From contig NW_026262593.1 of the NCBI RefSeq assembly GCF_021869535.1, positions 46,996,001 to 47,060,000 of the forward strand: a stretch of 64,000 nt of DNA. The letters are read 5' to 3'. This DNA is from Mytilus californianus. Its lineage: Eukaryota. The translations under genes were made by a program, and so were the position numbers. Positions 1 through 22,439 of the stretch are shown piece by piece (the stretch's first letter is position 1; the number at the start of each line of letters is the position of its first letter). The notes beneath the pieces are model-generated. The model searched no databases. It had not been told where the DNA came from and was given only the letters and a program-made list of their open reading frames with translations.

Positions 1-322
1 TGGGGAAATCGAGAAATCGGGAAATTGGGAAATCGAGAAATCGGGAAATCGAGAAAGCGAGAAAGCGAAAACGCTAAATTGAGAAATCTATTTCCCGTTT
101 TCGAGTTTTCGCCTTCGCGTTTTCGCGTTTTGGCTTTCTTGCTTTCTTGATTTCTCGATTTCCCGATTTCCCGTTTTCTGGATTTCCCGATTTCTCAATT
201 TCGCTTTTTCAATTTCTCGATTTTCCGATTTCCCGATTTCTCGATTTCGCAATTTCGCGTAAAAGTGAAAGGAGAAAACGCGAAAACGCGAAAAGGCGAA
301 ATGGCCGCATCCGACCACCATA
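1..322. mobile_element. Right end of a foldback/MITE-like element made of 8-9 bp units (GAGAAATC/GGGAAATC) whose orientation flips near 88
   Basis: 1-87 are GAGAAATC/GGGAAATC repeats and 88-258 are their reverse complements (GATTTCTC/GATTTCCC). A short CG-rich terminus ends ...GCATCCGACCACCATA. The left end is outside the window. Lies in an intron of the NIT-GC gene. Confidence 0.6.
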
Positions 323-453
323 GGATAGTGATTACTGTAGACGAACTACGTAGACCACTCGGCCATCGACGTCATTCTATGGCAGATGTGGTTGTCATTG
401 TAATACTAGCACGTATCGAATAAGTAAGTAATGAATAAAATTAAAGTAAAAAC

Positions 454-746
454 CTGATACCACCATGTAGCCATCTCCGACTGTTTCCACTTTATACGTA
501 TCATAGATACTAATTCTATCATCAAAACACGAAAACAACGTGTTCAACATGTCTGTTACTTGAAAGGGTGAACTGTTTGACGACAGCTGAGTGAAACCGA
601 CCATGTCGCTTTGAAATATTGTACATTCTGGGAAATGTTCAGCGTTGAAGCTTCCATTCTGTTTCAGGTCCTCAGCCACTGTCCTCGGTAACATTTGGAA
701 CAAAACAGCCTCACTCTGCTTCTTTTCTCTATTCAATGCTTTGGTT
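454..746 (-). CDS. NIT-domain guanylate cyclase, coding exon 3: coiled-coil/dimerisation helix and first half of the class III cyclase domain
   Basis: Translates [27 protein letters not shown]...[16 protein letters not shown]...[25 protein letters not shown], with both metal-binding Asp (SDMVGF, GDGY) and the GTP-specifying Glu (KVET). Acceptor AG at 748-747 is phase 2, matching the donor at 2946. The donor GT at 453-452 is at the usual VSG| position but has a weak consensus. The gene continues left of the window. Confidence 0.9.
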
Positions 747-1257
747 CTTTTATATGCAATAAACAGAAATACAGAATGAATAAGATTAAACTTGTTATAA
801 ATACATGTAGCATTATTGTACAGTTTCATCACACACTATAACATTAAAAGTACTTTCATTAACATCTAAAAGGGATCGAAATTGTTAATTTGATCTTTTA
901 AAAAAACTTAGTAAGTATGTGATGAATTTATTGAACACATAAAAAATGTAAATGCAGTTTGTGCATATTTTACGAAATACGTGTAGGTGTTATGTGTTTG
1001 AACGAATGCATGTTAATTTCACACGATCTAGGGTAAAAGTCAATGATACAGCAACCTAACGACACAAAAAAAATCAAAGGACATCCAGAGGTCAACATAC
1101 AGGCTTCAACAATAGTCGTGTCTAAACATAATGTAGAGCTTTAAGTCGCCTAGAATCTCAATAAGTTACGAATAAATTTAACAGAGACTATCACTGATAT
1201 GCCATCAGCAAAAAATTTCCGAAAGAAAAAAAGTAAAAATATACATCAACATATGAT

Positions 1258-1990
1258 TAAAATAAAAATAAGGAGATGTGGTATGATTGCCAATGAGACA
1301 AATATCCACCAAAGTTCAAATGAAGTGGATTTAAGCAATTATAGGCAACCGTACGTCCTTCAACAATGAGAAAAACTCATACCGTATGCTCGGCTATAAA
1401 AGGCCCCGACATGAAAAATATGAAACAATTCAATTGAGAAAACTAACGGCCTAATTTATAACAAAACAGCTTACGAAATAAAAGATATGACAGACATGAA
1501 CCAACGACAACCACTGAACTACAGGTTCCTGACTTAGGACAAGCACATAAAGAATGTGGCAGGTTTAAACGTGTTTGTGAGCGCTCAAACCTCCCTCTAA
1601 CCTGGGACAGTGGTTTAACAGTACATCATAAGAACAAACTATAAAAATCAGTTGAAAAAGGCTTAACTCATCAGATGGATACAAATAGAAACACCTCTAA
1701 CAAAAACACAAAGTGGACGTGGACGGGTACTTATACATCCCAAAAACAAAAAGACAATAAGTACAGATCTGAGAGTACTCGCAGTTATTAATGACAGCTA
1801 GTTCAAAGCCAATAACAAACCAATGAAAAAAATAATGTACCTAAGACTAGAATATCAATCAGTACATATCCAACATCCAATGGATTTAGTGTAAAGACGT
1901 CATTAACAGTCAGAGAAAAGCATGACCTTGTACAATGCCAAACTATAAGTATCGACAGATTGTAGTACCGCGAAAATACATATGTGTAAT
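1258..1990 (-). repeat. 3' portion of an abundant interspersed repeat family (probable 3' UTR of the adjacent Penelope-like element)
   Basis: Directly adjoins the RT C-terminal relic at 1993-2435. Related pieces recur at about 9090-9410, 12340-12620, 20260-20800, 24190-24620, 26050-26290, 35500-35760, 37280-37520, 45430-45770, 56760-56950 and 59490-60030 (shared motifs TGTTTAACCCCGCC, CTGTCCCAAGTCAGGA, ATACCACATCTCCTTATTTT). Confidence 0.7.
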
Positions 1991-1992
1991 AT

Positions 1993-2435
1993 TTAGTATG
2001 GTTTTAATTTACTGATAACAAAATCAATATTTACACCAATAAAAACAATATTCAAAGATATAATTACAGTTTTGAAAAGGTAACCTTTTAGAATAAGTTT
2101 ATTTAAAGGACTAATAATTTTACCAGGATCGTATCTAAATTTCCGGGCTCGGTTTACAACATCATCGTAAAATTTAGGATTTGCTATTCCGTTTGAAATA
2201 AGTTTTCTACAGGTACAGCCAAACTTGTAGACCAAATTTTGTATCTATGAAAGAATTTTGTAAAGGTTTTAAGTAATTTGTGGTAACGAAATCCCTGACA
2301 TAATAATTTACTAGTAGTACATAGATTACGCTCATTAAAATCCAAAACGTCACTACAAACACGAGCATAGCGAACGAGTTGGGATATATAAACACCGTAA
2401 GACGGTTCCAAAGGAACATAGACAACCACGGACAA
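1993..2435 (-). mobile_element. Penelope-like retroelement reverse transcriptase C-terminal relic (frameshifted)
   Basis: Overlapping ORFs give PSYGVYISQLVRYARVCSDVLDFNERN...KLLCQGFRYHKLLKTFTKFFHRYK then KFYDDVVNRARKF...LILKGY. YGVYISQLxRY is the motif I recognise from Penelope-like RT thumb regions. Confidence 0.75.
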
Positions 2436-2946
2436 GGTTCTTGACTTCAGAAAGGCACATGAACATGTGACGTAATTAACAATCTCAATCTCTTAATCTC
2501 GATCAGTGGACAAAAAAGGCTCATAAACGAACATTGCACAATGAAAACCAGTACAGAAATTTTAGACCTTGCTCAAGGTACCAATCGAAGAATTCTTTAT
2601 TCCTGTTATTACTGAAGTGGGAATCAACAAATTTGAATTCATATATAGTCAGTATTAGCAAAACCAAGTGCGAGAAATTATTGAGTGCTGTCTTTCACGC
2701 AACAATTGCATTGCATAAACAATAATTGGTTCCTCTATGCAAACTGTTGACATGGATTTAGTATATTATTGGAATATCCACAAGAGTCTAAATGACGTGC
2801 ATGAAAGCAACTACAGGTCCCTGCACGACCTTCAACAACGAGCATAATATCCCTACCGTAAGTCAGCTATCAGGCCCCATTATGAATAAATGTGAAACAA
2901 TTCAAACGAAAAAAAAAAACAAACGGCCTTACCTATGACTACTTAC

Positions 2947-3994
2947 TTTTTAGCGATGTTTAATGAGTACTTTTGGATATTTGATGTCAATTTGTATACA
3001 AAAAGGATTATGACTGGACTTATGATTACAATTCCGGAAAAGATAACACCTGCTATTATCATTTCTTTCAAATCAGCATTGGAGTTGTTTTTTAGAAGTC
3101 TGTTGATCTTAGCGGTTAACAATATCTGTGCAGATTTCATAACATCCATATAGATACTCATGTTTGCAAACCACCGGTTTGCCTTTTCAAGCGATCCTTC
3201 CGAGACTGATGAATTATTAGCTTTTATATCTTCTCTCAAATCGTTTATTACACGCAATGTTTGATTTTGAGCGTCAAGTGTTGTATGATAAATATCGTAA
3301 GCCGTAACGGAATACATTCTTGCAGATTCAAAATGTGTTTTTGCACTGTTTTGACTTTCCATAAAGAGTAAATAGTGCGTCCGGTCCACGAATGCACCTG
3401 TCGCGTAGTAATATATGCCATATCCTCTCTCTCGACCAATATACTCGCTGGCTATGATCAATTCTTGATAGCCCACTAGTGTTTTCCATATAGTTCCAGT
3501 ATCCAACTCATTAACTGAATCATACATCCACTTTATAAATATTTCAATAGTCTGCGAGTAAAAGCTTATTTCATCAGTTGCTGTCGCATTATTAGAATCC
3601 AGTTCGTATCGATGTCTATTCAGAAAATAAACGAAATGTTCGCGTGACTGGAATTCTTTCTGTTTATTACGCGTACTAACAGGCCACGAGGATAAAGTAT
3701 CTAAAGCGGCATCTGTTTCCGGATATGCAAGTAATAGTTCTCTTTTTGAATCAAAGCCAATTTGACTTAAATAAAGGGAGCTCATATCTCGTTCTTTTTG
3801 CAGGGCCTGTAGAAATCCACCAAGCTGTACTCCAAAATCTATTTTTTCGGCTATTTCATCGGTATTGATGTAACTTGATAAAGATTTAGAAAAACCCACT
3901 GCAGTGATAGTTGACAATATCAGTAATGGAAATAAAACAACTGCCAGCATTTTTGCCATTTGTTTTCTCTGTCCAATAATCGTAATTGGATTAC
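2947..3994 (-). CDS. NIT-domain guanylate cyclase, coding exon 2: TM1, extracellular NIT (nitrate/nitrite-sensing type) domain, TM2
   Basis: 1048-nt open exon. Acceptor TTTCAG at 3996-3995 (phase 1), donor GTAAGT at 2946 (phase 2). Hydrophobic segments MLAVVLFPLLILSTITAVGF and MIIAGVIFSGIVIISPVIILFVY flank a helical domain with the two NIT Arg motifs LQKERD and SEYIGRERG. Confidence 0.9.
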
Positions 3995-4776
3995 CTGAAA
4001 TGCATAAATCCATCGAAGTATTACATAGTTGCAGGGTTTTTCGAAAAGTGAATCGTTAATTTAGTTTGTTCAATTGTGAATACCAAACGAATAATCCAAA
4101 TGAATGAATGATACAAACTAGTGTGGGAAAGACAATAGTAAAGTCATTTTAAATGTCTATCGTACAGTAGGATCACGCAAATGATTCCATTAAATCACGT
4201 GTCTGTAGTCCATATGAAGTAAATTTTTCATTAATTTATTTGCGGATTTATGGTCGCATGAAACAACTGATCTCTAAAATTTATTTGGTTCAAGATACCA
4301 ATTAAGTGACGAAAATTCATGTTTTTTTTTTCTTTCAAATCGATGAATATTTCGCACGTTTCAATTTTCCAACCAACTACCCGAACAATGTACCTTGTGT
4401 TGCCATAAAAAAAAATTAAAAAAAACAGAGAAAAAAATCTACCGAAAGACAAAATGCATATTACTGAACAAATGACAAAAAGGCCCACAAAAGACATCTA
4501 GAGGGTAGGATCCAGTCTTCGATAATTGATAGATTTCTATACAATGTGTCAGGCTCTAAATTGTCCCCGAGTCTATACAATTATGATCTGATTAAACAGA
4601 AACAATCTGTGCCACCCAAGCCAAATTCTCCACACACACAAAAAAAAATTAATATATGACGTAAGACGAGCACTAACGAGCTTCGTGACTCTGGACACGA
4701 TAATGTGGTGGGATTCAGTTTCTTTATCTTTGATATCAAATCTCCCCCTTTTCTTGATCAGTAGACTCCGCATGTG

Positions 4777-4870
4777 GAGCAGGATCTGCTTACACTTCCA
4801 GAGCATCTGAGATTACCCCCAGTTTCAGTGGGGTTCGTGTTGCTCCTTCTTTAGTTTTTTTATATTGTGT
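4777..4870 (+). repeat. Fragment of a second Penelope-associated repeat (GGAGCAGG...CTTCCGGAGCAC...GGGTTCGTG family)
   Basis: The same motif recurs in reverse at about 19170-19230, 19520-19565, 36745-36850 and 40900-41000. The last copy adjoins the RT relic at 41080-41280. Confidence 0.6.
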
Positions 4871-5019
4871 ATTGTATACTGTTGGTTGCCGTTTGGTCGG
4901 TTTTCTTTTTTTTTTTTTGACATGGCGTGTTTGTCATCGATTTATATGTTTGATTCTCCCACTTTGATATCTTCCGCCTATCTTTAACAAAACATGCATA
5001 CAAGAATACAGCGCTACGG

Positions 5020-5350
5020 CAATAAAAATCAATTAAGGTTCTGGTGGACTATCAGTCCCCGAGGATATCGTCAACTCAGTAGTCAGTATTTCGGTACGGA
5101 CATTTTATTAAATATAACAAACCTTTCTAAAAGTGTCCGTTTATAAATTTAGAAATTATAAAGAAACTAAGGTTTCAACTCCCTCAGAAAAAGTTGAACT
5201 TAGAAGGATTTGACTATTTTTGTAGATTCTTTTTGGTCATATAGCTCTTCAACTGTTTCGGATATTATACATCCTGGTCTTTTGAGTACTAGTATTCGGC
5301 TTTTAGCGTTCCTGGTGAAGGTAAATCCAGAGAAGCGCTTCAGACGCATG
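5020..5350 (+). mobile_element. Degenerate hammerhead-ribozyme-bearing repeat (Penelope pLTR/retrozyme-like)
   Basis: Ends in TAGCGTTC-CTGGTGA-AGGTAAATCCAGAGAA-GCGC-TTC-AGACGC, a mutated CUGAUGA...GAAA core. The upstream part resembles the element at 13010-13200. Confidence 0.55.
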
Positions 5351-5432
5351 ACATCTATAAAGTGTTGTTTTCCTTTTTTTAAGGAATAGCACTTAACTGA
5401 AAATAACTGTATGATAAATAACAAATAAACAA

Positions 5433-5647
5433 TTAGTTTCTTGTGTATAATTTGGAGTTTAGTATGACGTCCATTATCACTGAACTAGTAATAGTATACA
5501 TATTTGTTTAGGGGCCAGCTGAAGGACGCCTCTGGGTGCAGTAGTTTCTCGCTGCATTGAAGACCCATTGGTGGCCTTCGGCTGTTGTCTGCTCTATGGT
5601 CGGGTTGTTGTCTCTTTGACACATTCCCCATTTCCATTCTCAATTTT
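5433..5647 (+). repeat. Young interspersed repeat, 5'-truncated copy
   Basis: Nearly identical to about 20010-20219 (...GGGCCAGCTGAAGGACGCC...GACACATTCCCCATTTCCATTCTCAATTTT). A reverse fragment lies at about 24105-24160. Confidence 0.8.
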
Positions 5648-6346
5648 AAAATATAATCAAATTATATTATCATGATTATAATAAAGGATACTCGAAGTTA
5701 CTGAAAGCAAGCTCAAAGTACGCATCCTGTCGATATGAAACCACGCCGTTCTATAGTATATATCCCTTATTTTTCTATTAATATCAGTTGTTGGACATTA
5801 TACATGCATGACATTAATACACAATTATTGACTTTTGATGAGGATAAAACAATGATTTATCAACCCCAGAGATTTGATATTCACCGAGGTCAATGGCTAA
5901 TCATGCAATTTGCGGATTGGTTACTTTGGCAAGGGATATGAGCCCATATCTCATATGAACAAAAACGAAGATCAGACTGGTACTTAATGTAGAAAGCAAG
6001 ACACTCCAGAGTATTATAATTGATGTTCGGGGTTTACATGAGATATGGTATCATATTCCCTGTCTGCGACCTATATCTTTTTTCGCCTGACGCCTCAGGG
6101 AATGTAAAACACTGACAGGAAATGTGATCATATTTCCCCTGTGAAGAATCGGAATAACATTATAGTGCGATTTAAAAAGCGTATATTGAAGCTACCTTTT
6201 GAGGAGTTTTTGTGTTTTATGTGGTTGCTATGTAATTGATGTATACTCAACCATTCCTCTTATGTATAATCAAAGCCACCGTCCAGCCCCATCTCGTCAT
6301 AATCCCAACCCACAAAATAGTGTTTTATAACATACCGATGACTTAC

Positions 6347-6545
6347 CAACACATATTCTTCTGCATGATTGATTTGGTGCTGAATGCAGCATACTCATAA
6401 TGGCCTCATTGAGATCATTCTGTGAGAACGTAGAACTAGATCGAGTGCTGATGGAATATCTTCTTCCTCGAGGTCCAGCGGCCTCTGATTTCAAGCTCCT
6501 CATGGATATTTCAATAGGGATGATTTTGTTATTTAGTGCCGCCAT
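6347..6545 (-). CDS. NIT-domain guanylate cyclase, probable first coding exon (cytoplasmic N-terminal tail)
   Basis: ATG at 6545-6543, open for 66 codons (MAALNNKIIPIEISMRSLKSEAAGPRGRRYSISTRSSSTF...CRRICV). Canonical donor G|GTAAGT at 6346 is phase 1, giving CVG-NPITIIG when joined to 3994. Confidence 0.75.
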
Positions 6546-8709
6546 TCTGCTTATCTAAATTTAATATTGTTTTGAAGAACTGTAATTTTACATAAAATCG
6601 GTGTATACAGTTCTAATGTAAATTTGACTTTGTGAAATTATTAGCACAAAAACTCATGATATATATATTTTTTTTAAACCAACGAATAATACGATCCCCA
6701 AAAAGCATTTAGGGCATACATGTGCATAAGGATTGTTTTTCATTTAGTGCTTAGGAGTAATCAGGCCATTGGTTTTCTCTTTTAAATTGTATTCATTTGT
6801 CATCCCGCTTCTACGAGTTTTGATCATTGTTAAGACCGTACGGCGACCTGTAGTTCTTCACAACAATGTCAGTTGGTCTTTGGTGGATAATAGTTGTCTG
6901 ATTTGAAATCTTACCAGACCTTATTTCATACAGTTTAAAATTTTGAATCATGATTTTTGAGAATTTGTATGTTTGAACAAATTTTCATTAAAACTAAAAT
7001 ATGGTAAATAAATGAGGAAAAAATATAAAGACAATTCATTTGAGATTTTTTTTATTCCGGTCATTTTGATGTATTAAATTTGATCTTTAATGCTTGCGTT
7101 AAAAGACGTACATTATAAGTTTCCAAAACCATATAATCTTATAAACATAAAATATATTTTGGATTTAATTTTACTTAAACTGCCATGAATCTATGGTAGG
7201 ACAGACAAACTCCAAGGACATTTACTTAAAAAAAAACCAAAATGATATGACATATTGTTCGTGATGTTGTGAAAATAATAATAATGATAATAATAATAAT
7301 ATTAACTTCAAGGATACTGCCTCATTCAGAAACAAATTTCCTAATTCTTTTATTTTCCGCAGTTATTCTTTATACTTTTGCACCCCATTATTCTCCAGTC
7401 TTTAACTTTTTTTGCTCATTTTTCTCTATTTTTTTTTTTTTCTTCATTATTCTCTATTCTGTAAAGACCACCCAGACCCTCCTATAGTGAAATATTGCTA
7501 CTTTATGTACAGACAACTGTGTGAAAAGATGTTCTCGTATTTAAACCGGAAATAAAAATAAAGGAACGAAGCAAATTAGAAGGACAAAGTAATAAGAATG
7601 TAGGCATGATAAAATCAAAAGGAAATTGTCATATTTCAAAATGTCTTACCTTATCTTACAGGTACCACGGATAAATGATCTAATAAACTTTTTATTTGCG
7701 TCTTACTTCACAAAACCATGTCGCATGATATGTGCTAAAGAGTTGAAATGGTGATAATTAGCTTAAATTAAGTGAAAATGATTACAATTAGTGTTTAGTT
7801 TATTGACGCAATAATCATGTTTTCTTGTTAAAAAGCAAGGAATGTTATTTGTCCAAATATGGTATAAAATATGCAGTTCAAAGATCAACTTAAAACGTGT
7901 TCCGTCTAGAATATTGTGTTAAATATCGTATAAACCAAAACATTGTGTTGACGGCCTTGCGGTTATCCACCCCTAGCATTGCTAAATGCTGATAACTTTT
8001 AATTATCAGTTCATTAGAATTCCATACCACTTTTTTTTAATATTGATAATTTGAAACTTAAATTTTAAAGAATCTGTAAGTCAATAGAAATAAGCAAATA
8101 AGTTTATTGAAATAAAGGCCAAACATTGGTTTTAAAATATCTTCAGTTATATAATGTACAACAAAATTATTATCACTGATACCACGGTTGAGGATATTAT
8201 ATAGATTTATCCTTGAATTGACCCGTTTCTTCTATACAAATATACGTTTATAGTCGCCTGGTATTCCGCTTCTGTTGTTAGCGACTGGTTATATTCAAAT
8301 TATTGGTTACGTCACAGTTACGGTCCGCGTTCAAGTCGTGGTGATTTCATATTAAAAATTTTTTTTTTTAAAAATCCAACGGTTGGGAAGTAAAAAAACT
8401 ATACGTTAAAGAGTAAATATTAAATTGCAGGAAGGAAACAATGTTCGTACATTGTAGGAAAATATCAAATGTTACTTATTGTATTTGTACTTGCTACGAA
8501 ACAACAGAAAAGCTCGGCGAGCTTCACTTTTCTCTCTGTTTCGAAAGTTCATACAAATAAATTTTAAATATTTCCAACAATGTACGAATATTGTCTAGGC
8601 ATGACAGTATTATTATAGGCGGTGAATGTACCGGTAATTATAATATTATCTTGCTTCAACTGAATTCCCGAGCTACGCTCTCTTTTTCTTTTGCCCCCAC
8701 CCCTTTCTT

Positions 8710-8727
8710 TGTGTGTGTGTGTGTGTG
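8710..8727. repeat. (GT)n microsatellite
   Basis: About 8-9 GT units. Confidence 0.85.
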
Positions 8728-9655
8728 GAGGGGGGTGGGGATTAAGCATTCAAATATTTCTATAAAAACAAATTGAGCGTCGAATTCGAATCGCCCTGAA
8801 TACATATATACAAGTAATATTTGTCACTGGACGTTAATAAAACAGATCATACCATCAAGAAATAATTTCTCAAATTTCGATTCTTGAAAATCTATTCAAG
8901 TTTACAGCCATTTGGCTAAAATTTACTTCTTTTCTCAATACTGTAAATATTCTTTTGAAAATACACGTTCAACTTGTCGAATTGGTCTATTTCATTATGA
9001 AGAATGAACGACATGTAAATATGAATAATGATGCAGGATGAAGGTCAGAGCGACAGAAACACAATGACACAGACAAGTCAAAACTAGGTCACAAACATGT
9101 TTAACCCCGCCACATTCTTTATGTGCCTGTCCCAAATCAGAAGCCAGTAATTCAGTGATTGTCGTTAGTTCATATCTGTCATATTAATTTTTTTCGTAAC
9201 TTGTGTTGTTATAAATCAGGCCGTTAGTTTTCTCGTGTGACTTGTTTCACATTTTGTATAGTCGGTGCCTTTTACAGCTGATTTTACCGTATGGGCTTTG
9301 CTCATTGTTGAAGGCCATTTATGATTGCTTACATCCACGTCATTTTAACTTTGATGGATAGTTGCATCATTACCAATCGTACCACATCATATTTTTATAT
9401 CAACATACAAAATACAACTCAGAAATACACTTCCAGTTTAAACATTTGAAATAGCACGAAGCTTTTCTTATTTTATTCAAACACACCTACTCTGTTGTTA
9501 TGACACATTAGAAAGGTATTGGTACTGTGAATGTGTAATGTTATTATATCAAAATGTAGCCTAAATATATAAAAAAATAATGGATTTGAAGCGAGACTGG
9601 TGTATCAATACTTTTGCTTTATACGTATTCAGGACAAAACAATCAACTCAAACAC

Positions 9656-11364: not shown

Positions 11365-12797
11365 AACACGCTTGAACGTAAAAAGGTGTACCCGATTTTC
11401 TCTTTTGATAAGATGAATACCCATTTTGGTTATTTTACCCCAAAAACTACATGAAATGTAATTTACTGCTTGAAAAAGATCAAACAGTATAATTCGACAA
11501 TTAGAAGAAAACAGTTGGATTATCACAAATCGGCACTAAAAGAATTCCAATACTGATGGGAGGACTTTGTGTTTCTAGCTCAGATTTTGAATTAAAAATT
11601 AAAGAAAACCAACTAACGAATAATGAATTTATATTTTTTTTCTACCTAATCTGCTGAGTCAAACAAAGTTTTACGAGGGAGTCTTTTTCTTCTATGGGAT
11701 ATCCATCCTATTTGCAGGGTCGCCATATAAAAAATATATGCGTTTATTTTTTAAATATAATTTACCTCGTTAATATAGTTATAAATGTTAAATTAAATTC
11801 ATTTAGTGTATTTTGACATTTTGATACGGTCCCTCTATTTTTTTAGTCAGTGTAGGTGTCGGTGTCGGTATAAGTGTCCGTGTAGATGACTTTTCGAAAA
11901 TGTCTAATAAAATAACATGATAAACGAAGGTGATAAATACTGAAGTGGACCCAGGTTAATATACTAAACCAAAGCCATTATCACCTTATCAAATGTACCG
12001 AGCGCAATTATTATCGATATATATAAACTTTAGGTAGTCAATATATAAATAACACATAGATGAGATGGTAATTTGGAATGTTATTAAATGATATTTTGAC
12101 GAAAATCAGCATACGCAACACTGATGACCGCGCCCGGTTTATATAAATACAGCTTTTCGGCTCAGTCTATTACTGAAAAATACGTATGTTGATGTATAGG
12201 ACTTATTTTTATTCAATTTTTAAATTTAATTGACATGAACAAATGTTTTGTTGTTACCGCAAGAAAAACATTGTCAATCGAGGCGAAGCTGTGTAATAAT
12301 GACTTTTTCAGCAATATTGGTCATAAACGGCATGTTACATCATTGTCCCAGGTTAGGGGACAGTTTATAGCGCTCGCAAACATGTTCAACCCCATCACAT
12401 TTCGTATGTGCCTGTCCGAGGTCAGTAATCTATCATTCAGTGGTTTTCGTTGGCTGATGTCTGTCAAATTCGTTTTTTGTTAATTTATTTGTACATAAAT
12501 CAGGCCTTTGGTTTCTCGTTTAAATTATTTCACATTTTGTCATGTCGGACCTTTTATATCTTACTATACGGTATGGGTTTTGCTCATTGTTGAACGCCGT
12601 ACGGTGACTGACCTTCAATAGTTAAGATTAGAATCGAATGTTACCGCCACGATGAACAGAGGAAAACGACTTATAGTTCTTTAAAATTAATTATGAAACA
12701 ACGTATTCCCCTATGATTTTATTATTAATTATATTCTTATACTACAGATAAAATCAATAATTCAAACATCAATACAGGGAATACAAAATTTTGAACA

Positions 12798-12917
12798 TCA
12801 GTTACATGGCTCAATAAGTCGCCATTTACATTCCTGGCCAGCATCTCTTTCACACACAGCGTTGGCTTTGTAACAGTCGTTAACAAGACGTCGGTCACAT
12901 TTCTTAAAACCAGTGTT
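12798..12917 (-). CDS. TIMP-like protein, last coding exon (C-terminal Cys-rich subdomain)
   Basis: Acceptor CCAG at 12919-12918, phase 0. NTGFKKCDRRLVNDCYKANAVCERDAGQECKWRLIEPCN then TGA. The A-x-C...C-x-W pattern matches the TIMP C-terminus. Confidence 0.75.
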   Translation of the reverse strand, partial: NTGFKKCDRRLVNDCYKANAVCERDAGQECKWRLIEPCN

Positions 12918-13009
12918 CTGGTGTAGATAACAGCAATATGAAAAATATAAATACATAAATGTTAAAATCAATAATAAGTATTAAATGAACTAATCATAGA
13001 GAAGCACCT

Positions 13010-13200
13010 TAAAATTTGGACGCAGGACGCGCGTTTCGTCTACAAAAGACTCATCAGTGACGCTCGAATAAAAAAGATAATAAAAGGCCAAGTAAAGTAC
13101 GAAGTTGAAGAGCACTGAGGACCAAAAATTCCGATAGGTTTTGCCAAAAACAGCTAAGGTAATATCTATCCCTGGGGGTAGAAACCTTAACTTCATCTGC
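13010..13200 (-). mobile_element. Short repeat ending in a minimal type I hammerhead ribozyme motif (Penelope pLTR/retrozyme-like)
   Basis: Minus strand reads GAGCGTCA-CTGATGA(13057-13051)-GTC-TTTTGTA-GAC-GAAA(13037-13034)-C-GCGC-GTC-CTGCGT. The catalytic core, 3-bp stem II and palindromic loop III are intact; stem I is partly mismatched. Confidence 0.75.
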
Positions 13201-14276
13201 TATTATATAATACACATGTACACATGTCTGTCATATTTTATTTCGGTAATCGTGCATCACCACAACCATATGTACTGCAGTCGTCCGGTCGAAATATATA
13301 ATCAATAGGCAAATTATTTAGAATTGTTTGTTTCAATCTGAAATTGATAGCCAAGAATGAAGAATTTAATTGAAATTGAAAATCAAATACAAATTATTCA
13401 TTTAAATAGCCCTTTAAATATATCCTTTTTGTAATCAAATTAATAATATAATAACCTGTAATAAGCATTTGTCTTCTTTTTATCTTGGCTTTGGGTTAAA
13501 CAAAGTTAAGGGCTCTGAAGCATGTAAAAGGACGTATCTGTAGTGTATTAAAAATTCGTTGAACCAGTATTTGAAGTCACCTCCACATTATAAAGAGTAC
13601 AGTATTCTCTGCTTCCGATAATTATTTCAGGCTTGCAATGACAGAACTCAAAGCCGTAGTATGTGGATGCAACTTGGGAATATTTTGTTAAAAAAAATAC
13701 AGATGAGCTCACTATAATATCAACGTGAATCAAAGAAGAGATATCGTTTCATATGCCAGTTGATTTTAGTGCAGGGAAAAATTGTCCGGTGGAACAATTC
13801 TATATTTTTATATGGTTCATTTAAAAACGACATTTGTGCTTCTCATATGTCTATGGACATAAACAACGAAATGAGTTATTCCAAAATGTCTTTAAAGATT
13901 TGAAAAAGAGGCGGAAGATACCAATGGGACATTCAAAACTTATAAGTCGAGCTAAACTAACAATGCCATGGCAAAAACACGAAAGTGCATCGATACTGGT
14001 GTGAGTTTAATGAAATATATAATGAATGAAAGCATGAATATCAAAAAGTCATTAAAAATAGTAAATATAAGCCAAAATTATCAAAGAAAAATTTTCCTGA
14101 GTGAGTTACAACCTCCATTTCAGTACAACTACAACAGGAAAGATAAAAATAGGAAAAGTAGTTATCTCCTGTGCCGTTTTCAACCGACTCGCAATGTCAG
14201 CTTATAGATGCAAGCTAAGGTAGATGTATCAGACCTTTTTGTATTTGTAATTCATATTACTTCAAGTTCAATAGAA

Positions 14277-17200
14277 ACTAGACTTGTAATTGCGAGCAAT
14301 AACGGATGGCACCCTCGTTCTCCCATTGCCAGGGTAACGGCAGTCATTTTGAAATTCCAAAGTCAAAGAGTGCATCTACACATGCAAATTATCATTTTTG
14401 TAAAGTTTCATTTAGTTTGGAGCATTTTGAAATTTTTGACATTTTTGCTGTTTCCATGGTTACGGCAGCCTTTTTGAAAATTCCAACTTCAAAATGCAAC
14501 TCTGCCCATGCCAGTTACTATTTCTGTAAAGTTTCATCCTTTTGATTTTTTTTGCTGCATCCATGGTTACAGTGGATAATTCCAAAATTCTAAAAGCAGA
14601 CATCTCATTGCCACATGTCATGTTATATATCAGTACAGTTTCATTGACTTTGGTGAAATACTCTTTAAGAAAATGCTGATTTTATGCATTTTCCCATAGG
14701 ATCAATGTAAAACTTGCCCCCAGTTTCCATGACAACGGCGGCCATTTTGGAGTATCCAAATATTGTCTTAACATCTTGGCATACTGGGTAACATTTTCAT
14801 AAAGTTTCATCCAGTTGGGTTTTATAACGGAAGAGTTAGAATTTTTGATATTTTAGCTGTTTCCATGGTAACGGCAGCCATTTTGAAAATTCCAAAGTCA
14901 AACTGCAAATCAGCACATGCCAGTTAACATTCCTGTGGAGTTTTTTCCAGTTTGGAACACTTTGATTTTTTTCGCATTTTTGCTGTTTCCATGGAAACGG
15001 CGGCCATCTTTTACCATTCCATAGCAAGGTGCACAACTTTACATGGGGGTCTTCATTATAGTAGAGTTCCATCAACATTGGTTCATTGGATTCCAAGAAC
15101 TCGCTTGGACAAAATGTGTGGAGAAAAATAATAAAAACTAGAATTGCAATTGCAAGCAATAGCGGATGTCACCCTTCCCCCATTGCCACTAAGCGGCAGC
15201 CAATTCAAAATTTTAAACAGTGGTTGCACATATATGCATTGCTATACACCTTTCTGCAAATTTTCAGTACATTAAAGGCTTTTTCAATTTTTCTCATTTT
15301 TGATGTTTCCATGGCAACGGCGGCCATTTTGGAAATTCCAAAGTGGAGAGTCTCATCTTTACTTGCCAGTTCACATTTATATTAAGTTTCATTAAATTTG
15401 GAGCATTTTTTGAAATTTTTGAAAGTTTTGCTGTTTCCATGGTAACGCTTATTAATTCCAAAATTCCAGAGACATATGCCACACTGACTGATGACATGTT
15501 ACATATGATTGCAGTTTCATTTGGTTTAATCTTATATTCTTTAAGAAAATGCACCTTTAATATGTTTTCCCGTAGGGTCAATGTTAAACTTTTGCCAAGT
15601 TTCCATGGCAATGGCAGCCATTTTGGAATTTCTAAATATAGTCGGTGCTTCCACACATACCAGGCAACATTTCCATAAAGTTTCATTTGGTTTGGTCTAA
15701 AAGAATTGGCTTTTTGAAATTTTTTCACATTGTTGCAGTTTCCATGGAAACGGTGGCCATTTAAAAAATTCCAAATGTGTCCTGCATAACTAGAGTTGGT
15801 GGTCCTCATTATGGTACCCACTCATTATGATTGGTCCACTAATCTATGAGAAAACTCTAGGACAAAAAGGTGGAATAATAATAATAATAACTAGATTTGT
15901 AATTGCTAGCAATAACGGATGGCACCCTTCCCCCTTTGCCAGGTGAGCGGCAGCCATTTTGAAAATTCCAAAGTCAAAGAGCGCATCTACAGATGTCTAT
16001 TAACATTGTTGTAAATTTCATCAATTTTGGAGCATTTTGAAATTTTTGAATTTTTTTGCTATTTCCATGGTAACGGGTACAATTTCCGAAATTCCAAAAA
16101 ACAGGTGCCACTTTGGGATATGCCATGTTACATATCCATTAAGTTCTAGAAGGTTTGATCTAACATTCTTGCAGGAAATGCAGCTTCAATGTGTTTTCCC
16201 ATAGGGTCAATGTTAAACTTTCGCCCTGTTTCCATGACAATGGCGGTCATTTTGGAATTTCCTAATATTGTCACAACATCTAGGCATACTAAGGAACATT
16301 ACCATAAAGTTTTATCCAGCTAGGTCTTATAATGAAAGATTTAGAATTTTGAAATTTTTTCACTGTTTTGCAGTTTCCATGGAAACGGTGGCCATATTAA
16401 AAAATTCCAGAGTCAGATGCACAACTTCACATGGGGGTCCTCATTATAGTAGAGTTCCATTAACATTGTATCACTCAATTCTGAAATGTGTGGAAGAATA
16501 ATAAAAATAGTAAGAAAAAAAAGAAACGTAGAATAACAATATGTCACCCCAACTCCGTTGAGGGTGCCATAATAATAAAGAAACGGAGGAAAAGCAATAT
16601 GTCACCCGACATTGTCGTACGGGTGACATAACTAGATTTGCAATTGCAAGCAATAGCGATTGGCACCCTTCTTCCCCCGTTGCCAGGTGAGTGGCAGCCA
16701 TTTAGAAAATTCCAAAGTCAAAGAGGGCATCTACACATGCAAATTATCCTTTTTGTAAATTTTCATTAAGTTTGGAGCATTTTGAAATTTTTGACATTTT
16801 TGCTGTTTCCATGGTTACGGCCGCCATTTTGAAAATTCCAACTTCAAAATGCAACTCTGCCCATGCCAGTTACCATTTCTATAAAGTTTCATCCCGTTTG
16901 CAGCTTTTTTATTTTTTTTAGAAATTTTGGACATTTTTGCTGCATCCATGGTTACAGTGGATAATTCCAAAATTCTAAAAGCAGACATCTTATTGCCACA
17001 TGTCATGTTATATATCAGTACAGTTTCATTGACTTTGGTGAAATACTCTTTAAGAAAATGCTGATTTTATGCGTTTTTCCATAGGATCAATGTTAAACTT
17101 GCCCCCAGTTTCCATGACAACAGCTGCCATTTTGGAGTATCCAAGTATCGTCTTGGCATTTTGGCATACTAGGTAACATTTCCAGTAAGTTTCATCCAAT

Positions 17201-18590
17201 TGAGTCTTATAATGAAAGATTTAGCATTTTTCACAATTTAACTGTTTCCATGGTAACGGCAGCCATTTTGAAAATTCCAAGTTCAAAATGCAGCTCAGGC
17301 CATGCCAGTTACTATTTTAGTGAAGTTTCGTACAGTTTGGAACACTTTGAATATTTTCGGATTTTTGCTGTTTCCATGGAAACGGCAGCCATCTTGACCA
17401 TTCCAAAGTCAGGTGCACAACTTCACATGCTGGTCTACATTATGGTATAGTTCCATCAACATTGGTCCATTAAATTCTAAGAACTTGCGTGGACAAAATG
17501 TGTGGAAGAAGATTTAGGAAAAAAAGAATCGTAGAATAACAATACGTCACCCCAACTCCGTTGAGGGTGCCATAACTAGATTTGCAATTGCAAGCAATAG
17601 CGGATGGCACCCTTCCCCCGTTGCCAGGTGAGTGGCAGTCATTTAGAAAATTCCAAAGTCAAAGAGTGCATCTACACATGCAAATTATCCTTTTTGTAAT
17701 GTTTCATTAAGTTTGGAGCATTTGAAATTTTGGACATTTTTGCTGTTTCCATGGTTACGGCGGCCATTTTGAAAATTCCGACCTCAAAATGCAACCATGC
17801 CTATGCCAGTTACCATTTCTGTAAAGTTTCATCCAGTTTGCAGCATTTTGATTTTTTTTGAAATTTTGGACATTTATGCTGCAGCCATGGTTACAGTGGA
17901 TAATTCCAAAATTCTAAAAGCAGACATCTCATTGCCACATGTCATGTTATATATCAATACAGTTTCATTGACTTTGGTGAAATACTCTTTAAGAAAATGC
18001 TGATTTTATGCATTTTCCCATAGGGTCAATGTTAAACTTGCCCCCAGTTTCCATGACAACGGCGGCCATTTTGGAGTATCCAAATATTGTCTTGACATCT
18101 TGGCATACTGGGTAACATTTTCATTAAGTTTCATCCAGTTGGGTCTTATAACGGAAGAGTTAGAATTTTTGATATTTTAGCTGTTTCCATGGTAACGGCA
18201 GCCATATTGAAAATTCCGAAGTCAAACTGCAAATCAGCACATGCCAGTTACCATTCCTGTGGAGTTTCTTCCAGTTTGGAACACTTTGTTTTTTTGGCAT
18301 TTTTGCTGTTTCAATGGAAACGGCGGCCATTTTTTACCATTCCATAGCAAGATGCACAACTTTACATGGGGGTCCTCATTATAGTAGAGTTCCATCAACA
18401 TTGGTCCATTGGATTCCAAGAACTCGCTTGGACAAAATTTGTGCAAGAAAAATAATAAGAAAAAAAAGAAACGTAGAATAACAGTATGTCACCCCCAACT
18501 CCGTTGAGGGTGCCATAATAATAATAATAAGGGAAAAAAAAGAAACGTAGAATAACAATATGTCACCCCAACTCCGTTGACGGTGCCATT
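14277..18590 (+). mobile_element. Five head-to-tail Helentron-associated (HINE-like) non-autonomous elements with internal subrepeats
   Basis: Unit starts ACTAGA(T/A/C)TTG(C/T)AATTGC at 14277, 15137, 15890, 16631 and 17575. Internal subrepeats carry TTTCCATGGYAACGGCRGCCATTTTG. 3' hairpins CACCCCAAC-TCC-GTTGAGGGTG at about 16545, 17548, 18490 and 18563. Confidence 0.75.
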
Positions 18591-19618
18591 ATCACCAAAG
18601 AATGATTTTATTCAATGAGAAGATATCAACTATATAGCGGAATGTAAAAAGGGATAATGCTAGCCTCTTTTCTTTTATTTCTTGACAAGTCCCAAGCCTG
18701 TGCTATGTCTGCCTCACACGAATGAAATAAAAGGTAAACAAGAAGTTGAACACAATAGGTTTCCATATAAGAATGCCGGTCGTAACAAAAATAGTCTATC
18801 AAATAACCAAGCATCTTAAAATAAGTTTTGGGGAATTTTTCAAAGAATCAGATTGGTTTTTACAATATGCATGTAATCTTCTCCTAAAACAAGTCAGAAC
18901 TTGGCAGTTATGTAAAACCAATTAATATTTTTTATGAAAAACTGTTTGTTTTCATGATTAATTGGAAAAATTGTAATGCCTGTAGAAGTCAAATGTTTGT
19001 TTATATTATTGCATGAGAAACGTTTAAAAAAAGAGGCGGACGATACCATACCGAAGAGAGACTAACACAGTCATGGCAAAACAAAATTAACGAAGAGAGC
19101 GAGACAAACACCAGTATACAAAACACTACATAAATATAATAAAGACTGAGTAACACGCGTATGTCCCTCACATAAAACCGGGTGATATCAGGTGCTCCGG
19201 AAGAGTAAGCATAACCTGCTCCATATGCGACACTCGTCGTGATGAAGACTGACATTGATTATTTGTACTACACAATGTATATCAATATTGTGTTTTACGG
19301 TATGTGTTGTAAACATCATTCTATAACCAGCACATCCGATCCTGATATCCAAAATTGATTGGATGTTTTGTAAAAAAAAGGTGGGAGAAGATAAAAAGAA
19401 GACCATATGAAACCAATAAAAACAGACAATGTCATGTTCAAAAAGTACATCAACGAAAAGGCAAAGACAGCCACTAAACGTTTAGCAACAATAACCTCAC
19501 CAAAAAAACACAGTGTGTGAGCTCAGTAGAGCTCCGGAAGGGTCAGTAGTTCCTGCTCCACTAGTGACTTTGTTGTAGTGTCTATTTTATGTCACCAAGT
19601 TTAATATATGCTACTTAC

Positions 19619-19743
19619 AAATCCCCCGCATCCATCACAATCGTAAAGGCCACGGAAACCACGTTTCTGTGTTTCTGTGAAGGTATTAAATGGTGCAATC
19701 CAGTCAATACTAGTTAATTCCTGTGGCTCACCAGGGACTCGTC
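19619..19743 (-). CDS. TIMP-like protein, coding exon 5
   Basis: Acceptor TACAG at 19745-19744 (phase 1), donor GTAAGT at 19618 (phase 0). RVPGEPQELTSIDWIAPFNTFTETQKRGFRGLYDCDGCGGF resembles the TIMP segment ITLCDxIxPWxxLSxxQK...Y..GC.C. Confidence 0.8.
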
Positions 19744-19905
19744 CTGTAGAAATGATATGTTATCAAAGTTACTATTTAGTCTTTCTTGTTTAGGCACCGA
19801 CCATTCGTATTTTGTAGGGGTCATATTTGTTTCAATAATAAACAGGAACAAAATATATTTTGTAAACTCAGTTTGGAATGTAAAGTTTTTCTGCTAATTT
19901 CCAAG

Positions 19906-20219
19906 ACGAGGGTTGAGATCTCAAAAAAACATGTTTAACCCCGCCGCATGTTTGCGCCTGTCCCAAGTCAGGAGCCTCTGGCCTTTGTCAGTCTTGTATC
20001 ATTTTTAATTTTAGTTTCTTGTGTATAATTAGGAGTTTAGTATGACGTCCATTATCACTGAACTAGTATACATATTTGTTTTTGGGCCAGCTGAAGGACG
20101 CCTCCGGGTGCGGGAGTTTCTCGCTGCATTGAAGACCCATTGGTGGCCTTCGGCTGTTGTCTGCTCTATGGTCGGGTTGTTGTCTCTTTGACACATTCCC
20201 CATTTCCATTCTCAATTTT
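19906..20219 (+). repeat. Young interspersed repeat, longer copy
   Basis: The 3' about 210 bp are nearly identical to 5433-5647. Confidence 0.8.
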
Positions 20220-21322: not shown

Positions 21323-21464
21323 CATATACAGTGAAAATGTAGTAGTCAACATGATTTTCCAGGTCAACGGTGCACTTGACTTTTTTGTAATTTGTCCAAA
21401 ATGTTACCAAAGCACCAGGGACAACATCCGTATAATTGGCAAAGATGGTCACTTCCTTTGGTCT
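21323..21464 (-). CDS. TIMP-like protein, coding exon 4
   Basis: Acceptor TTACAG at 21466-21465 (phase 0), donor G|GTAAGC at 21322 (phase 1). RPKEVTIFANYTDVVPGALVTFWTNYKKVKCTVDLENHVDYYIFTVY aligns by eye to TIMP IYT...CGVxL....YLI. Confidence 0.8.
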
Positions 21465-22223: not shown

Positions 22224-22439
22224 CTGCAATGAAAATCACGATAGATATCTTAGCAAACTAATTAACCTGTACTTAGGACATCTCAGTTTTTTTCTATAAA
22301 ATCGAAATTAATAAGATAATTGATAACTTTTCGTTTAAATAAGAGAATTAAAAAAATCTGTTATTATAGTAATATCTATAATTTACCGTAGTCTTTTTAG
22401 AAGTATTGATATCTGTAGTCAGGGTTTGTGTTATTAAAA

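What the first reader, a model, noticed from the sequence alone, without database searches (positions are those of the whole stretch)
454..6545. Animal guanylate cyclase fused to a bacterial-type NIT nitrate/nitrite-sensing domain
Seen: three phase-consistent exons encode a cytoplasmic tail, TM, a large helical domain, TM, a short coiled coil and a cyclase, with no kinase-homology domain. Both Arg-containing motifs (LQKERD, EYIGRERG) correspond to the LQxERG and ExxGxER motifs that bind nitrate/nitrite in bacterial NIT sensors such as NasR and McpN. The cyclase keeps both catalytic Asp and the GTP-specifying Glu, but has unusual IFQSD and GDGY substitutions. Established: NIT-GCs have been described in the annelid Platynereis as unconventional NO-responsive cyclases. 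Inference: this is a bivalve cell-surface nitrate/nitrite/NO-to-cGMP receptor, a class with little functional study in molluscs.
Basis: partly seen in the sequence, partly recalled or inferred. Interest (0 to 1): 0.72.

Follow-up and report, generated by a model that had tools for sequence, protein, structure and literature searches.

The report
Mussel NIT-domain guanylate cyclase gene
This is the front part of a real mussel gene for a membrane receptor that joins a bacterial-type nitrate/nitrite-sensing (NIT) domain to a cGMP-making cyclase. The receptor family is already known in molluscs, but this Mytilus branch appears to have replaced two catalytic residues.

Summary
On the minus strand, three phase-consistent coding exons (6545-6347, 3994-2947, 746-454) encode 513 residues. 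The order is cytoplasmic tail, TM1, NIT domain (Pfam PF08376, 93 bits), TM2, a short signalling helix, then the first third of a class III cyclase domain. There is no kinase-homology domain. Both introns are removed exactly as predicted in mRNA contigs of a sister species.

Orthologues in four Mytilus species are 91-94% identical without gaps, in conserved synteny, with dN/dS about 0.2. The NIT profile and an AlphaFold model match only NasR in the PDB, and the NasR pocket arginines R50, R176 and R236 are all kept.

- It is an NIT-GC, but Moroz et al. 2020 already described NIT-GCs in molluscs, and orthologues are already in NCBI.
- McpN is a PilJ-domain sensor, not an NIT sensor.
- In every orthologue and sister paralogue, the off-window cyclase half has the transition-state Asn replaced by Arg and the Arg replaced by Leu or Ile, under strong purifying selection.
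- Ligand-driven cGMP synthesis by a homodimer is therefore doubtful. A partner subunit or non-canonical catalysis is likely.

The scan also noted a second NIT-GC 19.5 Mb away on the same piece of this genome.

The parts
7650..7706 (-). Non-coding 5'UTR exon (at least 57 nt), donor GTAAGA at 7649
   Evidence: Nt 25-81 of the full-length mRNA contig L002 match this stretch at 100%. Sequence read. The mRNA then continues at the acceptor tttAG just upstream of 6554.
6347..6554 (-). First coding exon: 9 nt of 5'UTR, ATG at 6545, and the cytoplasmic N-terminal tail (aa 1-66 plus the first nt of codon 67). Includes an RGRRYS basic/Ser-rich stretch.
   Evidence: The joint 3994|6347 is seen in contigs of runs X1, X2 and X3. 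Gapless match to orthologues from residue 1.
2947..3994 (-). Second coding exon (1048 nt): end of the tail, TM1, the whole NIT domain, TM2 and the juxtamembrane linker (aa 67-416)
   Evidence: Pfam NIT 93 bits. The joint 746|2947 is seen in RNA contigs. AlphaFold model has pLDDT 87.9 and is all-helical.
3891..3950 (-). TM1 (aa 82-101), preceded by basic residues (QRKQMAK)
   Evidence: Kyte-Doolittle window maximum 2.4. In the model it is continuous with the first NIT helix.
3105..3809 (-). NIT domain (PF08376), aa 129-363, carrying six N-x-S/T sequons
   Evidence: The family profile hits only NasR 4AKK at E=1.9e-11. Foldseek finds only NasR at E=4e-6, TM 0.64.
3786..3803 (-). LQKERD motif. R135 is equivalent to NasR R50.
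   Evidence: Alignment to NasR. In 86 family members E is kept in 86 and R in 85.
3423..3446 (-). EYIGRERG motif. R256 is equivalent to NasR R176.
   Evidence: Alignment to NasR. In 86 family members G is kept in 81, E in 70 and R in 69.
2994..3062 (-). TM2 (aa 378-400), followed by a basic linker (KLTSNIQKYSLNIAKK)
   Evidence: Hydropathy maximum 2.79. In the model it is continuous with the last NIT helix.
454..746 (-). Third coding exon (293 nt): signalling helix / cyclase transducer element (aa 417-447), then the first third of the class III cyclase domain (aa ~452-513). Carries D463, E503 and D507, and ends at the conserved VVSG| intron position.
   Evidence: Pfam Guanylate_cyc positions 2-68 of 183 and the HNOBA C-terminal helix. 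Aligns to human NPR1 residues 804-899 at E=2e-27. The exon has the same 293-nt length in M. coruscus and M. galloprovincialis.

Best explanation
Shown. This is the 5' portion of an intact, conserved Mytilus gene of the animal NIT-GC family. The window holds one 5'UTR exon and coding exons 1-3 of seven. The orthologous proteins are about 664 aa.

Inferred mechanism. The protein is a two-pass membrane receptor with both termini in the cytoplasm. Its glycosylated NIT ectodomain is a double four-helix bundle. The first and last helices of that bundle run straight into TM1 and TM2. An Arg-lined pocket (R135, R256, R320, plus the invariant R195) equivalent to the NasR nitrate/nitrite pocket probably binds a small NO-derived oxyanion (nitrite or nitrate), or otherwise responds to NO. 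The conformational change would pass through TM2, a 17-residue linker and the signalling helix to a dimeric class III cyclase domain of guanylate type (E503, and Cys in the orthologues).

Inferred from orthologues. This Mytilus-specific clade keeps both metal-binding Asp residues but has replaced the transition-state Asn/Arg pair by Arg/Leu. A homodimer would therefore lack a canonical catalytic centre. Most likely the protein makes cGMP only when paired with an NIT-GC subunit that still has Asn/Arg. Mytilus encodes such subunits. In that pairing it would act like the metal-donating half of sGC or of membrane adenylate cyclase. Alternatively it works with a relocated Arg at reduced or altered activity.
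For: Gene model and splicing.

Domain identity: Pfam NIT at 93 bits and cyclase at 67 bits. Ten full-length homologues all have NIT plus Guanylate_cyc at the same positions.

Orthology:
- 513 aa gapless at 93.6% to M. coruscus, 92.2% to M. trossulus, 91.6% to M. galloprovincialis and 91% to M. edulis.
- The locus is collinear, introns included, and keeps the upstream TIMP-like neighbour.
- In the tree the window sits in a clade with 99% SH-aLRT support alongside these orthologues.

Selection. dN/dS against M. coruscus is 0.205 overall and 0.045 for the helix plus cyclase N-half. For M. coruscus against M. galloprovincialis the cyclase C-half gives 0.089.

NIT pocket:
- The profile of 86 homologues hits only NasR at E=1.9e-11, with R135, R256 and R320 aligned to NasR R50, R176 and R236.
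- Mutating R50 or R176 abolishes the nitrate response of a NasR-based sensor (PMC9581486).
- The AlphaFold model (pLDDT 87.9) matches only NasR.

Family function. Platynereis NIT-GC1 makes cGMP after an NO donor is added, and only if the NIT domain is present.

Catalytic residues:
- The orthologue reads PRYCLFGSTVRIAALMES where NPR1 reads PRYCLFGDTVNTASRMES.
- All 17 members of the Mytilus clade have the pattern D, D, E, C, R, L/I.
- Mytilus also has NIT-GCs with the full canonical GDTVNTASRM motif: P0299, P0308, P0314 and P0315.
Against: - The exons that carry the Asn/Arg positions lie outside the window. Their state in this species is inferred from orthologues and from the co-varying Q461 and G508 markers that are in the window.
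- No ligand-binding or activity data exist for any molluscan NIT-GC.
- At least one bacterial NIT domain (PA4520) binds neither nitrate nor nitrite, so the ligand is not established.
- The clade still keeps the base-specifying Glu and Cys. Those residues would be free to drift if the subunit only donated metal-binding Asp residues.
- An Arg one helical turn upstream of the lost Arg might compensate. Many NIT-GCs carry Ser/Lys at these two positions, so the family may tolerate variation here.
- In the one RNA run of the window's own species, about 6% of the run gave essentially no reads on the exons. Expression in this species is therefore not shown.
- Cell-surface localisation, as opposed to an internal membrane, is not tested.
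Confidence: 0.72

Rival explanations
1. Canonical self-sufficient receptor cyclase. A homodimer senses nitrate, nitrite or NO outside the cell and makes cGMP by itself. The Arg at the Asn position (four residues, one helical turn, upstream of the lost Arg) takes over transition-state stabilisation.
For: - Both metal-binding Asp residues, the Glu and (in orthologues) the Cys are kept.
- The cyclase domain is under very strong purifying selection, with dN/dS 0.045-0.089.
- The change of Asn or Ser to Arg arose twice independently among Mytilus paralogues, in the RL/RI clade and in the RK pair P0173/P0195. That hints at a workable alternative.
- Platynereis NIT-GC1 works when expressed alone.
Against:
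- Here both are changed, and the Asp of the GDTVN motif is Ser.
Confidence: 0.28
2. Non-catalytic pseudo-cyclase. The NIT receptor keeps a folded, nucleotide-binding cyclase-like domain that acts as a regulator, scaffold or dominant-negative partner and never contributes to cGMP synthesis.
For: The transition-state dyad is lost in all 17 clade members, yet the domain is strongly conserved. Several paralogous classes with different dyads coexist in Mytilus.
Against: Both metal-binding Asp residues and both guanine-specifying residues are strictly retained. Pure pseudo-enzymes usually lose some of these. Other family members that did lose an Asp kept Asn/Arg (GDECNR, SDECNR). That complementary pattern fits heterodimers better than dead enzymes.
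Confidence: 0.12
3. Decaying gene copy or annotation artefact: an exon-like remnant of a duplicated NIT-GC that is not expressed in this species.
For: The same-species RNA run gave about one read over the exons. Mussel genomes carry many NIT-GC paralogues.
Against: - The reading frame of 513 codons is open, with canonical splice sites.
- It aligns without gaps to orthologues in four species, in conserved synteny.
- dN/dS is 0.2.
- A full-length spliced orthologous mRNA is present in three RNA data sets of sister species, at depth 9-21.
Confidence: 0.03

Closest known systems
Animal NIT-GCs (Moroz et al. 2020, Sci Rep, PMC7400543; Platynereis NIT-GC1 and NIT-GC2, Jokura et al. 2023)
   Same: Same architecture: NIT domain (PF08376) flanked by two TM helices, a short helix, and a C-terminal PF00211 cyclase, with no ANF-receptor ectodomain and no kinase-homology domain. 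The NIT arginines are conserved. The protein groups with metazoan NIT-GCs in the tree. Moroz et al. explicitly list molluscs as rich in these genes.
   Different: It belongs to a Mytilus-only clade in which the cyclase carries Gln in IFQSD, Gly in GDGY, Ser in place of the GDTVN Asp, and Arg/Leu in place of the transition-state Asn/Arg. I found no functional data for any molluscan member.
NasR of Klebsiella oxytoca (PDB 4AKK), an NIT-ANTAR nitrate/nitrite sensor
   Same: It is the only PDB match by profile (E=1.9e-11) and by fold (Foldseek E=4e-6, TM 0.64). NasR R50, R176 and R236 align with R135, R256 and R320.
   Different: NasR is a soluble cytoplasmic protein with an RNA-binding ANTAR output. 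Here the NIT domain is extracytoplasmic, sits between two TM helices, and is coupled to a cyclase. Sequence identity is only about 15%. The ligand is untested.
Receptor guanylate cyclases of the NPR1/GC-A type
   Same: The signalling helix plus cyclase N-half aligns to NPR1 residues 804-899 at E=2e-27. The orthologue's whole cyclase region gives E=7e-63. The VVSG| exon boundary and guanylate-type Glu/Cys are shared.
   Different: There is no ANF-receptor ligand-binding domain and no kinase-homology domain. There are two TM helices instead of one. The catalytic Asn/Arg are replaced in this clade.
Heterodimeric class III cyclases (sGC alpha/beta, membrane AC C1/C2, and nematode receptor GCs proposed to pair)
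   Same: The pattern of catalytic residues is complementary. This clade keeps the metal-binding Asp residues but lacks Asn/Arg. Other bivalve NIT-GCs lack an Asp but keep Asn/Arg. Mytilus also has fully canonical NIT-GCs.
   Different: Heterodimerisation of NIT-GCs has not been shown anywhere. The clade still keeps Glu and Cys. This is a resemblance in residue logic, not a tested membership.
McpN of Pseudomonas aeruginosa (PDB 6GCV)
   Same: A four-helix-bundle sensor that binds nitrate through an arginine (R61).
   Different: Its sensor is a PilJ domain that binds one nitrate at the dimer interface. It is not an NIT domain and has no LQxER or ExxGxER motifs.

Membership tests
Animal NIT-GC family | NIT domain (PF08376) above Pfam's gathering score | tested here: met
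   93 bits against a cutoff of 24.9, E=4.9e-26, profile positions 4-238 of 239.
Animal NIT-GC family | NIT domain flanked by two transmembrane helices | tested here: met
   Hydrophobic segments at aa 82-101 and 378-400. In the AlphaFold model both continue the terminal NIT helices. This was a hydropathy analysis only; no dedicated TM predictor was run.
Animal NIT-GC family | C-terminal class III cyclase domain (PF00211) | tested here: met
   Profile positions 2-68 of 183 lie in the window, E=1.7e-18. The remainder is encoded left of the window. Orthologues at 91-94% identity have the complete domain.
Animal NIT-GC family | No ANF-receptor ectodomain and no kinase-homology domain | tested here: met
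   No such Pfam hits. Only about 52 residues lie between TM2 and the cyclase core.
Animal NIT-GC family | Groups with metazoan NIT-GCs in a phylogeny | tested here: met
   In the tree of 55 proteins the window sits in a clade with 99% SH-aLRT support alongside the Mytilus orthologues, nested among bivalve NIT-GCs. Platynereis sequences could not be included.
Animal NIT-GC family | NO-, nitrite- or nitrate-dependent cGMP production that requires the NIT domain | not testable with these tools
   Shown only for Platynereis NIT-GC1.
NasR-type NIT nitrate/nitrite sensors | Double four-helix-bundle NIT fold | tested here: met
   AlphaFold pLDDT 87.9. Foldseek finds only 4AKK, at probability 1.00 and TM 0.64/0.60.
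NasR-type NIT nitrate/nitrite sensors | Pocket arginines equivalent to NasR R50 and R176 (and R236) | tested here: met
   R135, R256 and R320 align to them. Of 86 family members, 65 keep all four conserved Arg residues.
NasR-type NIT nitrate/nitrite sensors | Direct binding of nitrate or nitrite | not testable with these tools
   This cannot be assumed. The NIT domain of PA4520 bound neither ligand.
Catalytically complete homodimeric class III guanylate cyclase | Two metal-binding Asp residues | tested here: met
   D463 (IFQSD) and D507 (GDGY) align with the NPR1 FSD and GDAY Asp residues. In 162 family sequences they are kept in 141 and 150.
Catalytically complete homodimeric class III guanylate cyclase | Guanine-specifying Glu and Cys | tested here: met
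   E503 is in the window. The Cys is present in all orthologues (PRYCLFG), but its exon lies off the window.
Catalytically complete homodimeric class III guanylate cyclase | Transition-state Asn and Arg (the N and R of the GDTVNTASRM motif) | tested here: not met
   This was tested on orthologues, because the exon lies off the window. All 11 RL and 6 RI members of the Mytilus clade read STVR(I/V)(A/V)A(L/I)ME. The window carries the clade's co-varying markers Q461 and G508.
NPR/GC-A type receptor guanylate cyclases | ANF-receptor ligand-binding ectodomain plus kinase-homology domain | tested here: not met
   Both are absent. Only the signalling helix and the cyclase are shared.

The most novel reading that the evidence does not exclude
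NIT-GCs may work as membrane-bound counterparts of sGC alpha/beta heterodimers. Under this reading the gene represents a Mytilus-specific 'metal-donor' subunit class. It keeps both Asp residues but has lost the Asn/Arg dyad under strong purifying selection. It would make cGMP only when paired with a canonical NIT-GC or with an Asp-less, Asn/Arg-retaining NIT-GC. Two different NIT ectodomains could then jointly gate one active site, giving combinatorial sensing of NO-derived anions.
Probability: 0.3. Interest if true: 0.6.

Novelty: new member of a known kind. Interest (0 to 1): 0.38.

Why it matters
NIT-GCs are the only known animal receptors with a bacterial-type nitrate/nitrite-sensing module. 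They are a candidate second arm of NO signalling besides soluble guanylate cyclase. Only one member, Platynereis NIT-GC1, has been tested. Bivalves have large NIT-GC families and live in water with variable nitrate and nitrite, so ligand identity and subunit logic matter for their sensory physiology.

This locus adds no new family, since the family and its molluscan members are published and annotated. It does show a conserved, selected branch in which the catalytic dyad is rewired. That makes a concrete hypothesis testable: subunit complementation among NIT-GCs.

Tried and rejected
- A single-sequence search of the NIT exon against PDB sequences gave only a spurious myosin-I hit at E=0.03. 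The NasR relation needed a profile.
- tblastn of the partial protein against the whole window found no tandem paralogue.
- Rfam found nothing in window positions 1-9000.
- The tandem-repeat scan found only an intronic 8-bp array.
- The eLife version of Jokura et al. is not held, and the preprint has no stored supplements. I therefore could not add Platynereis NIT-GC1 or NIT-GC2 to the tree or read their catalytic dyad.
- The search for homologous proteins with the orthologue P0152 scored only 8,000 candidates and returned 8 hits. The orthologues came from the cluster listing instead.
- The window's own full-length protein was not found in the protein collection. The species is not one of the four with listed orthologues. 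It is closest to M. coruscus, at about 90-92% nucleotide identity including introns.
- The RNA run of the window's own species gave essentially no reads on the exons. Splice support therefore rests on sister-species mRNA.
- Pseudogene, assembly-artefact and contamination readings were rejected, based on the open frame, synteny, dN/dS and spliced orthologous mRNA.

Full report
**1. What is in the sequence**

The feature lies on the minus strand. Reading the DNA and splicing it in a script gives three coding exons:

| Exon | Window coordinates | Splice sites | Intron phase after exon |
|---|---|---|---|
| 1 | 6545 (ATG) to 6347 | donor GTAAGT | 1 |
| 2 | 3994 to 2947 | acceptor tttcAG, donor GTAAGT | 2 |
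| 3 | 746 to 454 | acceptor aaaAG, donor GTTTTT | 1 |

- Together they make 1540 nt, which is 513 codons without a stop.
- An in-frame stop lies three codons upstream of the ATG.
- A further non-coding exon at 7706-7650 is spliced to an acceptor just upstream of 6554.
- The gene runs off the left edge of the window.

**2. Domain content**

- Pfam finds a full-length NIT domain on exon 2 (PF08376, E=4.9e-26, 93 bits, positions 4-238 of 239).
- Pfam finds the first 68 of 183 positions of the class III cyclase domain on exon 3 (PF00211, E=1.7e-18). It is preceded by the helix that Pfam captures as the C-terminus of HNOBA.
- Hydropathy shows two membrane segments at aa 82-101 and 378-400. Basic residues lie on their cytoplasmic sides.
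- Six N-x-S/T sequons lie between the two segments, which fits an extracytoplasmic NIT domain.
- About 52 residues separate TM2 from the cyclase core, and no kinase domain is detected. The 'no kinase-homology domain' statement holds.
- Exon 3 aligns to human NPR1 residues 804-899 (signalling helix plus the start of the cyclase) at E=2e-27. The metal-binding Asp residues (D463, D507) and the guanine-type Glu (E503) are in place.

**3. Is it a real, expressed gene?**

RNA-seq contigs from three runs in three studies lie on the window as three blocks, 600-746, 2950-3990 and 6343-6556/6599.
- The joints correspond exactly to 746|2947 and 3994|6347. The three letters printed 'between' at the first joint are positions 2947-2949 with one synonymous difference.
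- These contigs differ from the window at about 6% of exon positions, so they come from a sister species.
- One of them is the 2115-nt Logan contig L002. It encodes the M. coruscus protein P0265 exactly.
- In the single RNA run of the window's own species, about 6% of the run gave roughly one read on the exons. Expression in this species is therefore not demonstrated.

Orthologues are 91-94% identical over all 513 residues without a gap. They come from M. coruscus, M. trossulus, M. galloprovincialis and M. edulis.

The window is collinear with the M. coruscus locus at about 90-92% nucleotide identity including introns. It is also collinear with the M. galloprovincialis locus, including the upstream TIMP-like neighbour.

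In both those species the gene has seven coding exons. The first three match the window's in length: 1048 and 293 nt for exons 2 and 3.

| Comparison | Region | dN/dS |
|---|---|---|
| Window vs M. coruscus | all 513 codons | 0.205 |
| Window vs M. coruscus | NIT region | 0.24 |
| Window vs M. coruscus | helix plus cyclase N-half | 0.045 |

A pseudogene or artefact is very unlikely.

**4. The NIT domain and the two Arg motifs**

A search of 1.84 billion representative proteins with exon 2 found 673 relatives. The full-length ones all have NIT plus cyclase at the same positions.

In an alignment of 86 of them, the window's motifs are the family consensus:

| Residue or motif | Conservation in 86 members |
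|---|---|
| LQxER: Glu | 86 |
| LQxER: Arg (R135) | 85 |
| ExxGxER: Gly | 81 |
| ExxGxER: Arg (R256) | 69 |
| R195 | 86 |
| Y212 | 86 |
| R320 | 76 |

- The profile hits one PDB sequence only, NasR 4AKK, at E=1.9e-11. R135, R256 and R320 sit opposite NasR R50, R176 and R236 (numbering worked out from the printed alignment).
- In a NasR-based biosensor, R50A and R176A abolish the nitrate response and R236A weakens it (PMC9581486).
- An AlphaFold model built on this alignment is confident (pLDDT 87.9) and all-helical. Its first and last helices run into the TM segments.
- Foldseek finds only NasR, at E=4e-6, probability 1.00 and TM 0.64.
- It is wrong for McpN. McpN's sensor is a PilJ domain that binds nitrate through R61 at a dimer interface.
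- The McpN paper also reports that the NIT domain of PA4520 binds neither nitrate nor nitrite. It suggests that NIT is a superfamily with different ligands.

**5. The cyclase domain: what the window cannot show**

The second half of the domain is off-window, so I examined the orthologues.

Against NPR1, the M. galloprovincialis orthologue aligns over the whole cyclase at E=7e-63. It reads PRYCLFGSTVRIAALMES where NPR1 reads PRYCLFGDTVNTASRMES.
- The guanine-specifying Cys is kept.
- The transition-state Asn is Arg.
- The transition-state Arg is Leu.
- The preceding Asp is Ser.

Catalytic-residue patterns in 161 family cyclase domains. Each pattern lists metal Asp 1, metal Asp 2, base Glu, base Cys, transition-state Asn, transition-state Arg:

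| Pattern | Count |
|---|---|
| D,D,E,C,N,R (canonical) | 62 |
| D,D,E,C,N,K | 19 |
| D,D,E,C,S,K | 17 |
| D,D,E,C,R,L or D,D,E,C,R,I | 17 |
| First Asp lost, Asn/Arg kept (G or S,D,E,C,N,R) | 11 |

- The 17 R-L/I sequences are all from Mytilus and include every orthologue of the window gene.
Gln in IFQSD occurs in 17 of 162 sequences. In the tree's row labels it is carried by all ten members of the orthologue group and its sister paralogue group, but not by the clade's outlier P0158, and by no row outside the clade. Gly in GDGY occurs in 22 of 162.
- In a maximum-likelihood tree the window sits with its orthologues (99% SH-aLRT support). That group is sister to a 65%-identical paralogue group carrying Arg/Ile. 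Both lie inside a Mytilus-only clade with 100% support.
- The altered half-domain is under strong purifying selection, with dN/dS 0.089 between M. coruscus and M. galloprovincialis.
- Mytilus also encodes NIT-GCs with the fully canonical GDTVNTASRM motif: P0299, P0308, P0314 and P0315.

**6. How it most likely works**

Shown: identity, topology elements, the NasR-like pocket, a guanylate-type cyclase N-half, and conservation.

Inferred:
- A dimeric two-pass receptor has an ectodomain that senses nitrite or nitrate, or responds to NO as Platynereis NIT-GC1 does.
- The signal passes through TM2 and the signalling helix to the cyclase dimer.
- In class III cyclases the active site is built across the dimer interface. 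One subunit gives the metal-binding Asp residues. The other gives the base-specifying and transition-state residues.
- A homodimer of this protein would therefore lack the Asn/Arg pair in both sites.
- I think the most likely reading is that it supplies the Asp residues to a site completed by a canonical NIT-GC partner.
- The main rival is that the relocated Arg (four residues upstream on the same helix) sustains catalysis in a homodimer. The same Arg substitution appears independently in a second Mytilus paralogue pair, which keeps that rival alive.
- A purely non-catalytic role is possible but fits the strict retention of Asp, Asp, Glu and Cys less well.

**7. Comparison with what is known, and novelty**

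- Moroz et al. 2020 described animal NIT-GCs with exactly this architecture and the conserved arginines.
- They listed molluscs among the phyla with the most copies, and proposed nitrite/nitrate sensing.
- Jokura et al. showed NO-donor-dependent cGMP production by one annelid member.
- Orthologues of this very gene are already in NCBI as 'uncharacterized protein' or 'guanylate cyclase' entries.
- A full-text search found no functional work on a molluscan NIT-GC.

The finding is therefore a new member of a known kind. The only new element is the rewired catalytic dyad of the Mytilus clade. It rests on orthologues, not on the window itself.

I did not test that one.

Noticed in passing
window 1262-2413 (intron 2 of the gene): A stretch of about 1.15 kb is absent from the orthologous M. 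coruscus intron. It is covered at very high depth by RNA contigs and reads, up to about 18,000 in contig word depth, with many loose ends at 1262 and 1301. It is probably a recently inserted, abundant and transcribed repeat element.
   Followed up: partly
window 5505-5648 and 20077-20220: A roughly 145-bp element is present twice in the window. It is also found at about 92% identity, in the opposite orientation, at non-orthologous places in the M. coruscus and M. galloprovincialis loci. Read depth over it is high and loose ends cluster at 5648. It looks like a MITE- or SINE-like repeat.
   Followed up: no
window 3-301 (intron 3): An 8-bp microsatellite array (GAAATCGA)n is followed by an array of a near reverse-complement unit (TTTCTCGA)n. 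Together they form an inverted pair of arrays.
   Followed up: no
window 6556-6599: One RNA contig (run X2) reads straight through the 5'UTR acceptor into the upstream intron. The contigs of X1 and X3 stop at 6556 and carry the spliced 5'UTR exon instead. This is either an alternative 5' end or a retained intron.
   Followed up: partly
L002:1-24: The public Logan transcript contig that encodes the M. coruscus orthologue begins with 24 nt of Illumina adapter sequence. This is an untrimmed-read artefact in the assembly.
   Followed up: yes
window ~12,000-23,550 (minus strand): Blocks of 73-86% nucleotide identity match the gene upstream of the M. galloprovincialis orthologue, which carries a weak TIMP Pfam hit. 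This supports conserved synteny. Other first-reader notes already cover this gene.
   Followed up: no
window 42731-43432 and 46352-47035 (plus strand): One long ORF has a DZIP3-like HEPN domain (PF18738, E=9.5e-10). A neighbouring ORF has only weak matches (E about 0.01) to beta-propeller-type families. Another first-reader note already covers these.
   Followed up: no
protein family level (P0021, P0219, P0226, P0231, P0222, P0229, P0225 and others): Some bivalve and nemertean NIT-GCs have lost the first metal-binding Asp (Gly or Ser) but keep the Asn/Arg dyad. That is the mirror image of the Mytilus Arg/Leu clade.
   Followed up: partly
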